Assembly (NCBI RefSeq): GCF_033153115.1
Contig: NW_026889805.1
Coordinates: 15,748,001 to 15,812,000 of the forward strand
Source of the DNA: Saccostrea echinata
Lineage: Eukaryota
Length of the DNA: 64,000 nucleotides
Direction of reading: 5' to 3'
Shown: piece after piece, positions 13,367 through 16,300 of the stretch
Position numbering within the stretch: position 1 is the first letter of the stretch
Layout of the letters: the number at the start of each line of letters is the position of its first letter
Notes under the pieces: model-generated
What the model was told of the DNA's origin: nothing
Databases searched by the model: none
The model's input: only the letters and a program-made list of their open reading frames with translations
Made by a program: the position numbers and the translations under genes

Positions 13367-16300
13367 ATGAGTTCCCTTTTAAACAAAGTCGTGATTATTA
13401 CAGGTTAGTATATTTTATATACATTTGATTTAGAAGAAATATTTATAGCTGTACAAACTGCATTATGTGTTTGTCACCGAAGCATGCGGAGACGCCTCAA
13501 TTATTGATTTTGAACTCGACTTTTGTTTTGTTTCTGCGAAAATCCCAGTTTCAGAAAGAATGATAATTGATGATATACACTATATACCTTGTTGCAAAAT
13601 TAATTATTTTACCATGAACCTTAATAACTCTATCAGTCTTTCACTCTGTGGGACTCTAAACCTTTATCAGAGATCATATTGTATAAATCCAGAGGCGAAT
13701 TCTATGAGACGCCGTTTGAGTATTTTTGAGGTATTTCCTGATATCAATGTGGAGGTTAAAAAAATATTTTCAAATATTATCTTAACGGATTTAAAATACA
13801 TGCTATATAAGTTATCGTATTAATTTTATCACAATAGATATATCAAATATTTCACTATTTTACATTTTTTTATACAACAGGTGCTAGTTCAGGAATAGGA
13901 GCTGCTACTGCTCTTGAATTTGCAAAAACTGGTGCAAAGTTGGTTTTGGCCGCAAGGAATGTAGAGAGACTTAACGATGTAGCCAGTCAGTGTTCAGCAA
14001 AGGGGCTACCACAGGATAAGGCATGTATATTAATTGGGAAGAATTAATTGACACTGTTTGGAGTATTGTCATGTTCTAAATTTTGAATTTACCGGGTGGG
14101 AGTAAATACAAAATTTAGAACATGACAAGTTGTCATGAAAAAGGTTAAAATAACAAATAGTGATCGATCTCAAAAATCCTACAATACATATCTGTAAACA
14201 GGGCATAAAACACTGACCCAGGTGCCTAGGAGGATTACCGGTAAGCATCCCCTATTGTCCGGTCACACCCGCCGCCGTGAGCCCGTGTATTGATCAGGTA
14301 GACGGAATATTCCGTTGTCAAATTTAGTATAAAAACATAGTGGTATGAAATATTTTAAGTCATATACGGTACAAATTTTTATGCACCAGATGCGCATTTC
14401 GACAAATTATGTCTCATCAGTGATGCTCATGCCTAAACGTTGGAAATCCGAAATATTTAAATAAAAACGACTCTGAAGAACTGAAAAAGGGTGCCAAAGA
14501 CTGGAGCCAAATAGTTGAAGGATCATAGCTATGCTTGAGGGAGATAATCCTTAATTTTGAAATAAATTTCTAAATTTTACCACAGCAATTAAATATATAT
14601 CTGTATTTTCAAGCTAGTACCGATGTACTTAGCTACTGGGCTGTAGAGACCCTTGGGAACTAAAAGTCCACCAGCAGAGGCCTCGACCCAGGGGTCATAA
14701 TGTAAATCATATACGGTACCAATTTTCATGCACCAGATGCGCATTTTGACAATTATGTCTCTTCAGTGATGCTCATGCCGAAACGTTGGGAATCCGAAAT
14801 ATTTAAATTAAAAAAAACTTTTGTCAGTCAAAATACGACCTAATGATAGGTTATTTTAGGGTTTGTTTTTGGCAGCAGTTCCATTTCTGGCTGTGTAATG
14901 TAACTTAAGTCCCTACTGCACCAATTTTCTTGATCGAATGCTACCTTCTAACAATCCTGTTGTTGTCCTGCAAATGATCTATATATTATAAATGCTTTAT
15001 AAAGGCGTATACATGAGTATGAACTAATCATCTAATGCATTCTCAAAATTACAAATCCGTAATGCATCTCTTGAACGGGGAGTCTTCACCTAAGACATTC
15101 CAACAAATCTCGAAACTACATAATAATAATATACATATTCCTTCTTCTACGTACATATGTACACGAAAAAGTGATCGTGGCATAATGAAGGTATTCTCCT
15201 GATTCGATTATCTATCTAGTGCTGTATAATATCGTCAAATCTAATTGTTTCTGAATTGCACACATTAATCTTTTTTTTTTTAAAATAATCACTTTCTTGT
15301 GAACTTCCCTTAACTTATCATTTCTTCTTGATTTTATTTTTATTTCTTTTGCAGATATTTGTAAAAGGTTGTGATATCACAGACGAAGAAAACTTGAAAA
15401 GTTTGATTGATTCAACAGTGAAAAAATACGGTCAAATCGACGTACTGGTAAGTCAACGAAACTTGAACATGATAAGTTAAGAATTCCCCTTTTCTGTGAA
15501 AAATGAACTATTATCAATTCTGTGCAAACTTGATGTTAAAAAGTTGGCCGGTATTGATACTATTGGTCAAAATCTAAAACCAACTCCGCCAGCCAAATAC
15601 AAATCAATCACTCATTAATCAAGTTTAATATTTCAACTGAGATTTTCAAAAAGAATTAAAATTTGCAAAAATAACACCCATATACAAGAAAGGAGACAGT
15701 CTGGACCCTAGTAATTACATGTACAGGATTATATCCATTCTCTCCACATTGAAAAAAAAACCTGTAGCTAATCATATCCATAGTTTTTTTGGTCAACTTT
15801 TATGCAAATCACAATCGGGATTCAGAAAATTACTTTCGTCCCAACTTGTTCTTACTAAACTAACTGATGAATTCATGGATACAAGCTATGGATAATAATA
15901 AATTTGTCTGTTTCACCTTACTCGATTTTAGTAAGAACTTTCAGGTAGTGAATCATGATATTCTGATTAAAAAATACTTACTTACTTAGGCCAGGCCTGT
16001 CGTTTCATGGGGAACTTAGGTCATCAACGACAGTGCTCCAACAAAATCGATTATGGGCTGCTTTTGCTGCGTCGTGCCATGTCATTAATTCTGTTAATTC
16101 TGCCTCTCACTCACGCCTCCAAGTGGTTTCTCTCTTTCTCTTGCCCTGCGGATTCCAGGTCAGGGCCTGGCGTGTGGTGCTGGATGGTGGCTTTTTTAGG
16201 GTGAGTCCAATCCAGCACCACTTCCTCTATCTGATTTGTACGTCCAATGGTTCCTGCCCTGCTCTCTTCCATAGTTCTTCATTTATGATCCTTTCAGGCC

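What the first reader, a model, noticed from the sequence alone, without database searches (positions are those of the whole stretch)
14357..14810. Hammerhead-bounded 347-nt unit: a retrozyme-like circular RNA template hidden antisense in an intron
Seen: two direct-repeat copies of a minimal type-I hammerhead on the minus strand, with predicted AUC cleavage after 14736 and 14389, releasing a 347-nt non-coding monomer. Stem-loop III is the palindrome AUGCGCAU. Established: minimal hammerheads with a palindromic loop III cleave as dimers, and metazoan non-LTR retrozymes are tandem units of a few hundred nt that yield circular RNAs and are thought to use Penelope-like RTs. Inference: this is a 1.3-mer integration of such an element. 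The copy at 14730-14772 has G12A, so this locus itself is probably crippled and active relatives should exist elsewhere.
Basis: partly seen in the sequence, partly recalled or inferred. Interest (0 to 1): 0.85.

Follow-up and report, generated by a model that had tools for sequence, protein, structure and literature searches.

The report
Decayed hammerhead retrozyme insertion
This is one worn-out copy of a small non-coding jumping element (a "retrozyme") that carries a self-cutting hammerhead RNA motif and has well over a thousand sister copies in the genome. It is a known kind of element, and this copy is ordinary.

Summary
On the minus strand, 14813-14350 is 1.33 units of a 347-nt repeat, with two minimal type-I hammerheads (14772-14730 and 14426-14383). 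The predicted cuts fall after C17 at 14736 and 14389. The downstream motif has every core base. The upstream one has G12A (14747) and a loop II one base shorter.

The unit belongs to a family. Its 35-nt hammerhead core occurs 1455 times in the 923-Mb genome at up to 3 mismatches (reversed-pattern control: 0). Natural dimers with two intact cores exist.

In 20 copies sampled without regard to length, the 3' end is fixed 36-40 nt past the cut. The 5' end is variable, and lengths run continuously from 103 to more than 580 nt. There is no poly(A) and no consistent target duplication. Resident Penelope-like elements show the same anatomy: hammerhead first, then a fixed end downstream.

I read this as a dead insertion of a non-LTR retrozyme, copied by a Penelope-type reverse transcriptase from uncleaved multimeric or circular RNA. 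Circular RNA, in vivo cleavage and the intron setting were not shown.

The kind is known (Cervera & de la Pena 2020). This scan also flagged hammerhead units on other pieces of this genome (s1-810234, s1-814368).

The parts
14350..14813 (-). Whole insertion, about 1.33 units: a 77-nt partial upstream unit, one 347-nt unit and a 3' tail of about 37 nt. The 5' edge is uncertain by about 8 nt and the 3' edge by about 3 nt.
   Evidence: Direct repeats. BLAST of the unit against the window gives 269-347, 1-347 and 1-39. No other copy lies in the window.
14730..14772 (-). Upstream hammerhead, inactivated. It has G12A at 14747 and a loop II 1 nt shorter. C17 is at 14736, so the predicted cut lies between 14736 and 14735.
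   Evidence: Sequence read. Family reads show G at 14747 and an extra base at 14750. Comparison with the family motifs.
14389..14735 (-). The 347-nt unit between the two predicted cleavage sites. It is non-coding: 38% G+C, and the longest stop-free frame in a circularised unit is 54 codons.
   Evidence: About 90% identical to more than 40 full-length sister units; mean pairwise identity within the family is 0.91.
14383..14426 (-). Downstream hammerhead with every core position intact. Stem I is 6 bp and stem II is 4 bp. Loop III is the palindrome AUGCGCAU. C17 is at 14389, so the predicted cut lies between 14389 and 14388.
   Evidence: Weak Rfam Hammerhead_3 hit at 14391-14429.
14350..14388 (-). 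3' tail: the first 36-39 nt of the next unit, ending at the family's fixed 3' terminus (...GAUUUACAU in sister copies, mutated here).
   Evidence: The 3' ends fall at +36 to +40 in 15 of 15 readable copies of an unbiased sample, and at 35-43 in the first sample.

Best explanation
The stretch is a dead genomic copy of a non-autonomous, non-coding retroelement of the non-LTR retrozyme kind. Its 347-nt unit carries a minimal type-I hammerhead whose helix III is only a palindrome (AUGCGCAU), so it probably cleaves only when two copies pair as a double hammerhead.

Family transcripts that hold two or more units could cut themselves into 347-nt monomers, which a host ligase could then circularise. 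This step is inferred from the published kind and was not shown here.

New DNA copies arise when a reverse transcriptase starts at a fixed internal site 36-40 nt downstream of the cleavage site. The template is an RNA still joined across that site, meaning an uncleaved multimer or a religated circle. The enzyme copies towards the 5' end and stops at a variable point. This yields copies from 0.3 to more than 2 units long that all share the same 3' end. The window's copy is a 1.33-unit product.

The most likely enzyme is that of a Penelope-like element. Those elements are abundant in this genome, carry their own hammerheads, and end in the same way a fixed distance beyond the hammerhead.

At this locus the upstream hammerhead is dead (G12A), and the two repeated ends have drifted 7% apart. 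The locus can no longer release a monomer and has no evident function.
For: - Motif anatomy and chance control.
- Family size: 2034 first-look candidates for the unit. There are 1455 cores within 3 mismatches, against 0 for the reversed pattern.
- Insertion anatomy: 20 loci were anchored on consecutive exact-core hits, which gives a sample unbiased for length. The 3' end is ...GATTTACAT(T)(A) in 15 of 15 readable copies. The 5' starts range from unit position 50 to about 340. Lengths run from 103 to more than 580 nt. There is no poly(A). No target duplication exceeds background.
- Repeated segments: within one insertion they differ by 6.4% on average (0.7-13.7%), against 10.3% between insertions. 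This fits units that were identical when inserted.
- Penelope-like elements in the same genome: more than 1175 GIY-YIG candidates, with open frames up to 951 aa. Seven copies carry a minimal hammerhead (UUUGUC/CUGAGGA/GGGAC..GUCCC/GAAA/AUUU) in the terminal repeat. Their 3' ends fall about 58 or about 145 nt past the cut, followed by (TA)n.
- Literature: a Penelope-like RT initiates internally downstream of its hammerhead on unprocessed RNA (PMC11167929). Non-LTR retrozymes of about 170-400 nt, including 350-390-bp mussel repeats, are known (PMC7229834). Retrozymes have been proposed to be Penelope derivatives (10.64898/2026.07.22.740005).
- Dimer energetics.
- Family RNA: reads are present in a 2026 RNA-seq run, with zero depth on the unique flanks.
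Against: - No sequence similarity was found between the retrozyme and the one Penelope family sampled.
- Five of the six sampled Penelope 3' ends run straight into (TA)n, against only 2 of about 46 retrozyme copies with (TA)n or (AT)n at either junction. The mobilising element is therefore unidentified.
- No read-end pile-ups occur at the cleavage sites. Many RNA reads run from the tail into heterogeneous flanks, so they come from read-through transcripts of dispersed copies. Neither cleavage in vivo nor circles are shown.
- Rfam scores the motif far below its threshold.
- The minimum-energy fold of the single motif hides the cleavage site in an alternative hairpin.
- The circular unit folds no better than shuffled sequence (z = -0.9).
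Confidence: 0.82

Rival explanations
1. It is a severely 5'-truncated copy (solo terminal repeat) of an autonomous Penelope-like element, not a separate non-autonomous family.
For: Penelope insertions are usually 5'-truncated and keep only the terminal repeat with its hammerhead. A short frame of 38-51 codons starts at the AUG inside GAAAUGCGCAU, which recalls the published element whose ORF starts inside the hammerhead.
Against: Upstream of each unit lies another unit, never an ORF, and arrays reach 3.6 units. A protein search with the short frame found only frames of 115 aa or less among 150 scored hits, though retrozyme copies swamp that search. Penelope ORF fragments and a Penelope terminal repeat have no match in the window. 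The 3' flank is a different, older repeat.
Confidence: 0.08
2. It is a satellite-type tandem repeat spread by DNA-level processes (unequal crossing-over, segmental duplication), and the hammerhead-like motif is incidental.
For: Some arrays look as if they grew at the DNA level. Three units of L016 share the same inactivating change and differ by only 0.7-1.3%. Some loci are segmental duplicates (L009/L010, L019/L020).
Against: Copies are dispersed on many contigs in unrelated flanks. They share one precise 3' end and have variable 5' ends, including many copies shorter than one unit. That is the signature of reverse transcription, not of recombination.
Confidence: 0.04
3. It is a SINE-like element, transcribed by Pol III and moved by a LINE.
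For: LINE-type RT fragments lie 1.6-3 kb away (16399-17246). Another note in this genome (s1-814368) proposed a tRNA-headed unit beside hammerhead motifs. The unit contains a loose B-box-like GGGTCGAGGCC (my own reading of the sequence).
Against: ARAGORN finds no tRNA-like head in the window stretch or in six family loci. There is no poly(A) or microsatellite tail. Lengths exceed one unit without a defined 5' end.
Confidence: 0.03
4. This particular locus is a working host gene for a circular or regulatory RNA.
For: Retrozyme circles are abundant in some animals. The downstream hammerhead is intact.
Against: The upstream hammerhead has G12A. Only 3 of 3176 laid RNA reads are 99% or more identical to this copy, and the unique flanks have zero depth. 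Conservation is flat across the unit, as expected for neutral decay.
Confidence: 0.02

Closest known systems
Metazoan non-LTR retrozymes (Cervera & de la Pena 2020, PMC7229834), for example the ~350-390-bp mussel repeats (cloned dimer construct DRtz_Mg353)
   Same: A non-coding unit of about 350 nt with low G+C (38%). Type-I hammerheads bound the unit. Copies occur singly and as tandem multimers, with more than a thousand per genome. Hammerhead-bearing Penelope-like elements are present in the same genome.
   Different: Most invertebrate retrozyme hammerheads were reported to cleave efficiently as single motifs. This one has the minimal helix III with a palindromic loop, which was described for amphibian and Penelope motifs. 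Circular RNA was not shown here. The core sequence was not found in the paper's held supplement or in the searched literature.
Newt and axolotl satellite hammerheads, which act as dimers (PMC7229834, section on axolotl)
   Same: A weak helix III, with far better predicted stability as a double hammerhead. The units are about 330-350 nt.
   Different: The helix sequences are unrelated. The genome here is small and AT-rich, and the copies are mostly dispersed short insertions rather than long satellite arrays.
Penelope-like elements and their 'tail', with internal initiation of reverse transcription (Frangieh et al. 2024, PMC11167929; Craig et al. 2021, PMC8557442)
   Same: The hammerhead lies near the 3' end. 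The insertion ends a fixed short distance downstream of the cleavage site. The 5' end is truncated and partial tandems form. There is no poly(A), and target duplications are hard to see.
   Different: There is no RT/GIY-YIG ORF. No sequence similarity was found to the one resident Penelope family examined. That family mostly ends in (TA)n, while the retrozyme rarely does.
Plant LTR retrozymes (PMC4918200)
   Same: Non-autonomous elements whose hammerheads bound a unit that can form circular RNA.
   Different: Plant elements carry type-III hammerheads inside LTRs of about 350 bp. They also have PBS and PPT motifs, 4-bp target duplications, higher G+C, and Gypsy-type mobilisation.

Membership tests
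Hammerhead ribozyme, type I | Catalytic core C3 U4 G5 A6 N7 G8 A9 ... G12 A13 A14, the A15.1-U16.1 pair, and H17 (not G) at the cut | tested here: met
   The downstream copy 14426-14383 has every position. The upstream copy fails at G12 (A at 14747). Of 54 full-length family motifs examined, 41 keep the core.
Hammerhead ribozyme, type I | Helices I and II around the core, with helix I open-ended | tested here: met
   Stem I is 6/6 (one G-U pair) and stem II is 4/4 with a 5-nt loop. This combination is expected 0.013 times per 64 kb by chance. The resident Penelope hammerhead keeps the same architecture with entirely different helix sequences.
Hammerhead ribozyme, type I | A stable helix III closing the three-way junction | tested here: not met
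   As a single motif, helix III is 2 bp around a 4-nt loop. That fold is -5.2 kcal/mol against a minimum free energy of -12.8. It is met only in the double-hammerhead form, with an 8-bp trans helix at -30.3 kcal/mol, as known for the dimer-acting subclass.
Hammerhead ribozyme, type I | Score at or above the Rfam gathering threshold | tested here: not met
   There is no hit at the gathering score. The best is Hammerhead_3 at 20 bits against 48.5, E=0.38. The low score is probably due to the minimal helix III (my inference; not tested).
Hammerhead ribozyme, type I | Self-cleavage at C17 | not testable with these tools
   No read-end pile-ups occur at 14389 or 14736 in one cDNA RNA-seq run. This is weak negative evidence only.
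Non-LTR retrozyme | Non-coding unit of about 170-400 nt with low G+C, bounded by type-I hammerheads in direct orientation | tested here: met
   The unit is 347 nt with 38% G+C, and its longest frame is 54 codons. It has two direct hammerheads.
Non-LTR retrozyme | Many genomic copies, from monomers to tandem multimers | tested here: met
   There are 1455 cores. Copies range from 0.3 to 3.6 units.
Non-LTR retrozyme | Presence in the same genome as hammerhead-bearing Penelope-like elements | tested here: met
Non-LTR retrozyme | Expression as linear and circular RNA of unit length | tested here: inconclusive
   3176 of 12.8 million RNA reads lie on the element, on both strands and at 88-95% identity. 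Many continue into other copies' flanks. No cleavage-site read ends and no back-joints were seen in the RNA run (X21). The library is cDNA and probably unsuited to circles.
Non-LTR retrozyme | Spread by reverse transcription | tested here: met
   The 3' end is fixed at +36 to +40 and the 5' end is variable. This is a signature, not a direct demonstration.
Autonomous Penelope-like element | An ORF with RT and GIY-YIG endonuclease | tested here: not met
   There is no such ORF in or beside the element.
SINE | A Pol III head (tRNA, 5S or 7SL) and a LINE-type or A-rich tail | tested here: not met
   No tRNA-like head was found and there is no A-rich tail. 5S and 7SL heads were not specifically tested beyond the Rfam scan.

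The most novel reading that the evidence does not exclude
The family's insertion anatomy has three features: one sharp 3' end 36-40 nt past the hammerhead cut, a continuum of lengths running through and beyond one unit, and no poly(A). This may be direct genomic evidence, in a non-vertebrate genome, that retrozymes are copied by a Penelope-type RT that initiates internally on a circular or uncleaved multimeric RNA. The retrozyme shares no sequence with the resident hammerhead-bearing Penelope family that was sampled. That would mean the enzyme recognises the hammerhead-plus-tail structure rather than a shared sequence. Young dimers such as L051, whose repeated ends differ by only 0.7%, would mean the family is still active.
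Probability: 0.3. Interest if true: 0.55.

Novelty: new member of a known kind. Interest (0 to 1): 0.33.

Why it matters
The window's copy is a dead repeat and matters little by itself. The family is useful for three reasons.
- It gives a clean natural data set of more than a thousand copies with one sharp 3' end, on which to test how hammerhead retrozymes are mobilised. The literature still treats that mobilisation as a hypothesis.
- It provides natural intact dimers for testing dimer-dependent hammerhead cleavage.
- It shows that Rfam-based annotation misses this class entirely.

Tried and rejected
- **Rfam:** no hit at the gathering score on the window or on 12 Penelope loci (which found only a tRNA).
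- **Similarity to Penelope elements:** I looked between the retrozyme and 13 Penelope loci by BLAST and motif scan and found none. A first strict regular expression missed the Penelope hammerheads; a looser one found them (versus 56).
- **Short frame from the AUG inside GAAAUGCGCAU:** I used it as a probe for a Penelope ORF start. All 150 scored hits had frames of 115 aa or less. The result is inconclusive because retrozyme copies swamp the search.
not supported.
  - The 3' flank 14135-14340 is a separate older repeat.
  - The 5' flank is essentially unique.
  - The RT fragments nearby are LINE-type or weak.
- **Target-site duplications:** none above background.
- **tRNA-like head:** none.
- **Host gene and intron:** no Pfam-supported exons lie near the element. 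Two paralogous minus-strand ORFs at 8.4-11.1 kb have only unnamed homologues. The intron claim could not be tested, and the organism could not be named.
- **MAFFT alignment of retrozyme and Penelope hammerheads:** it misaligned the cores, so no formal pair count was made.
- **Literature and supplement search for the core sequence:** nothing found.
- **Fetching 180 kb of Penelope loci:** Smaller requests worked.
- **Fuzzy-regex script:** timed out and was replaced.

Full report
**1. What is in the sequence**

On the minus strand, two direct repeats of about 118 nt lie 346/347 nt apart: 14350-14467 and 14697-14813, 89-94% alike. Each holds a hammerhead-like motif.

The downstream motif (14426-14383) has these parts:
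- stem I: GCAUCA paired with UGGUGC, 6 bp with one G-U pair
- core CUGAUGA
- stem II: GACA paired with UGUC, with a 5-nt loop
- GAAA
- the palindrome AUGCGCAU
- C17 at 14389

The upstream motif (14772-14730) differs in three ways. It reads CUGAAGA, which is allowed because position 7 is free. Its loop II is one base shorter. It has AAAA in place of GAAA, which is G12A at 14747. Its C17 is at 14736. The predicted cuts therefore bound 14735..14389, which is 347 nt.

The bare core is not significant in 64 kb (5 found, 4.2 expected). Core plus a perfect stem II plus at least 5/6 of stem I occurs once, against 0.013 expected. Rfam does not call it: there is nothing at the gathering score, and Hammerhead_3 scores 20 bits against 48.5.

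**2. It is one copy of a large family**

The unit finds 2034 first-look candidates in the window's own 923-Mb assembly. More than 40 full-length matches are about 90% identical. The 35-nt hammerhead core occurs 738+717 times at up to 3 mismatches, against 0 for the reversed pattern. At least 100 of these are exact.

Thirty-one full units average 91% pairwise identity, and conservation is flat along the unit (0.905-0.96 per 50 columns). That is what neutral decay of dead copies looks like.

Of 54 full-length motifs in the loci held, 41 keep the core, and most keep both stems. Natural insertions with two fully intact motifs exist (L051, L028).

**3. Insertion anatomy**

In the first 30 loci, the copies ended 35-43 nt past the cut and had variable 5' starts. 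That sample was biased towards full units.

I therefore fetched 20 loci anchored on consecutive exact-core hits. The results were:
- The 3' end is ...GATTTACAT(T)(A), at +36 to +40, in 15 of 15 readable copies. Two more have internal deletions in the tail.
- The 5' starts range from unit position 50 to about 340.
- Total lengths run without a break from 103 nt to more than 580 nt. About half are shorter than one unit (one hammerhead), seven are 1.1-1.65 units, and two are longer.
- There is no poly(A) and no regular tail repeat.
- Target duplications do not exceed background.

Every copy crosses the cleavage site at its 3' end. The template was therefore joined there, either uncleaved or religated.

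Lengths pass smoothly through one unit, so the template had no fixed 5' end. That fits a multimer or a circle.

Repeated segments within one insertion differ by 6.4% on average (0.7-13.7%), against 10.3% between insertions. This is as expected if the units were identical when inserted. For the window's copy the figure is 7.2%, so it is an old insertion. L051 at 0.7% is young.

**4. The likely machinery**

The genome is rich in Penelope-like elements: more than 1175 GIY-YIG candidates, with open frames up to 951 aa. Seven copies of one family carry their own minimal hammerhead: UUUGUC / CUGAGGA / GGGAC...GUCCC / GAAA / AUUU, then GACAA. It lies about 570 nt after the endonuclease domain, or about 410 nt before the ORF.

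These copies end at one of two sites, about 58 or about 145 nt past the hammerhead cut, usually running into (TA)n. This matches published work in three respects:
- a Penelope RT initiates internally, downstream of its hammerhead, on unprocessed RNA, at two sites that define the 'tail' (PMC11167929)
- hammerheads lie near the 3' ends of these elements
- (TA)n is a preferred target (PMC8557442)

The retrozyme's fixed +36 end is the same design. That is my main reason for proposing a Penelope-type RT.

This step is an inference. I found no sequence similarity between the retrozyme and the Penelope family sampled. Only 2 of about 46 retrozyme copies have (TA)n or (AT)n at a junction. The partner is therefore not identified.

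**5. The ribozyme**

The single-motif hammerhead fold is poor, at -5.2 kcal/mol. The minimum-energy fold (-12.8) is an alternative hairpin, AUGCGC paired with GUGCAU, which buries the cut site.

A double hammerhead has an 8-bp trans helix III and swapped stem I strands. It scores -30.3 kcal/mol, against -25.6 for two separate monomers and -32.6 for the best cofold.

In such a pair each core cuts the other copy's strand. At this locus at most one of the two sites could be cut, so no monomer could be released.

The circular unit is 63% paired but folds no better than shuffled sequence (z = -0.9).

**6. RNA**

Runs holding 23-36% of the sampled words come from four coded organisms and from a biofilm metatranscriptome. 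In one 2026 cDNA RNA-seq run, 3176 of 12.8 million reads lie on the element. They fall on both strands, mostly at 88-95% identity, and only 3 are 99% or more identical. Depth on the unique flanks is zero.

So the family, not this locus, is represented in RNA. There are no read-end pile-ups at the cut sites. About 350 reads run from the tail (loose ends at 14699/14703, which is +33 to +37) into heterogeneous AT-rich sequence, so they come from read-through transcripts of other dispersed copies. Neither cleavage in vivo nor circles are shown, and the library type is unsuited to circles.

**7. Surroundings**

- The 3' flank, 14135-14340, belongs to a separate older repeat (more than 2700 candidates, 72-79% identity).
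- The 5' flank is unique apart from a 35-nt piece found at about 37 other places.
- Broken RT fragments lie at 16399-17246 (LINE-type: RVT_1 and DUF6451) and at 18308-18682 (weak RVT_1).
- Penelope ORF pieces and a Penelope terminal repeat find nothing in the window.

I could not find exons around the element. Two paralogous minus-strand ORFs at 8434-9003 and 10473-11072 have unnamed homologues. 'Antisense in an intron' remains untested.

**8. Comparison with what is known, and verdict**

The kind is known: non-LTR retrozymes (PMC7229834), recently argued to be Penelope derivatives in vertebrates (10.64898/2026.07.22.740005).

This family meets the structural criteria, as set out in the membership table. 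It differs from most invertebrate examples in having the dimer-type minimal hammerhead. Its core sequence was not found in the searched literature.

I file it as a new member of a known kind. The window's copy is a decayed 1.33-unit insertion without evident function. The fixed-end signature is the one point that goes somewhat beyond the published descriptions I could read.

One script printed majority letters for the 62-nt hammerhead end and the first 45 nt of the unit, purely as a conservation check.

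Noticed in passing
window 14135-14340 (core piece 14241-14274): An older, very high-copy repeat lies directly 3' of the retrozyme (more than 2700 candidates, 72-79% identity). A 34-nt piece of it has very high depth in RNA and in other runs, with loose ends on both sides, as a conserved SINE-type core domain would.
   Followed up: partly
window 16399-17246 (-) and 18308-18682 (-): There are broken reverse-transcriptase fragments here. 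The first is LINE-type (RVT_1 at E=9e-6, plus DUF6451). The second is only weakly RVT_1-like (E=0.03). Neither matches the Penelope ORF pieces sampled.
   Followed up: partly
window 8434-9003 (-) and 10473-11072 (-): Two paralogous ORFs of 189 and 199 aa have no Pfam domain. The 199-aa ORF (the only one searched) has six homologues of 184-226 aa at 61-70% identity in public assemblies. They look like a small tandem gene family of unknown function.
   Followed up: partly
L033, L035, L036, L037, L039, L040 (about 570 nt after the GIY-YIG domain) and L043:1202-1245 (-): A resident Penelope-like family carries a conserved minimal hammerhead whose helix III is just AAUU. Its copies have two alternative 3' ends, about 58 and about 145 nt past the cut, usually followed by (TA)n. 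This is a natural example of the published 'tail'.
   Followed up: partly
L016:1460-2747 (G000:C10:833340-834627): A 3.6-unit array. Its three upstream units share the same inactivating hammerhead change (G12A plus a deletion) and differ by only 0.7-1.3%. The 3'-most unit differs by about 7%. Either the array grew at the DNA level or it was copied from a heterogeneous multimer.
   Followed up: partly
window 14820-14857: A 35-nt piece just 5' of the insertion recurs at about 37 other places at 92-97% identity. One lies about 55 nt beyond another retrozyme copy, in the opposite orientation (C3:14168328). It may be the end of another small repeat.
   Followed up: no
window 14592-14744 (-), and family copies: A short frame of 38-51 codons starts at the AUG inside GAAAUGCGCAU ([14 protein letters not shown]...). 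It is open in several copies. It may be a relic of a Penelope ORF start, or it may be chance.
   Followed up: partly
window 14066-14128: A near-perfect 27-nt inverted repeat with a 9-nt spacer. It draws weak plant-miRNA-like Rfam hits far below threshold, and is probably a small hairpin repeat (MITE-like).
   Followed up: no
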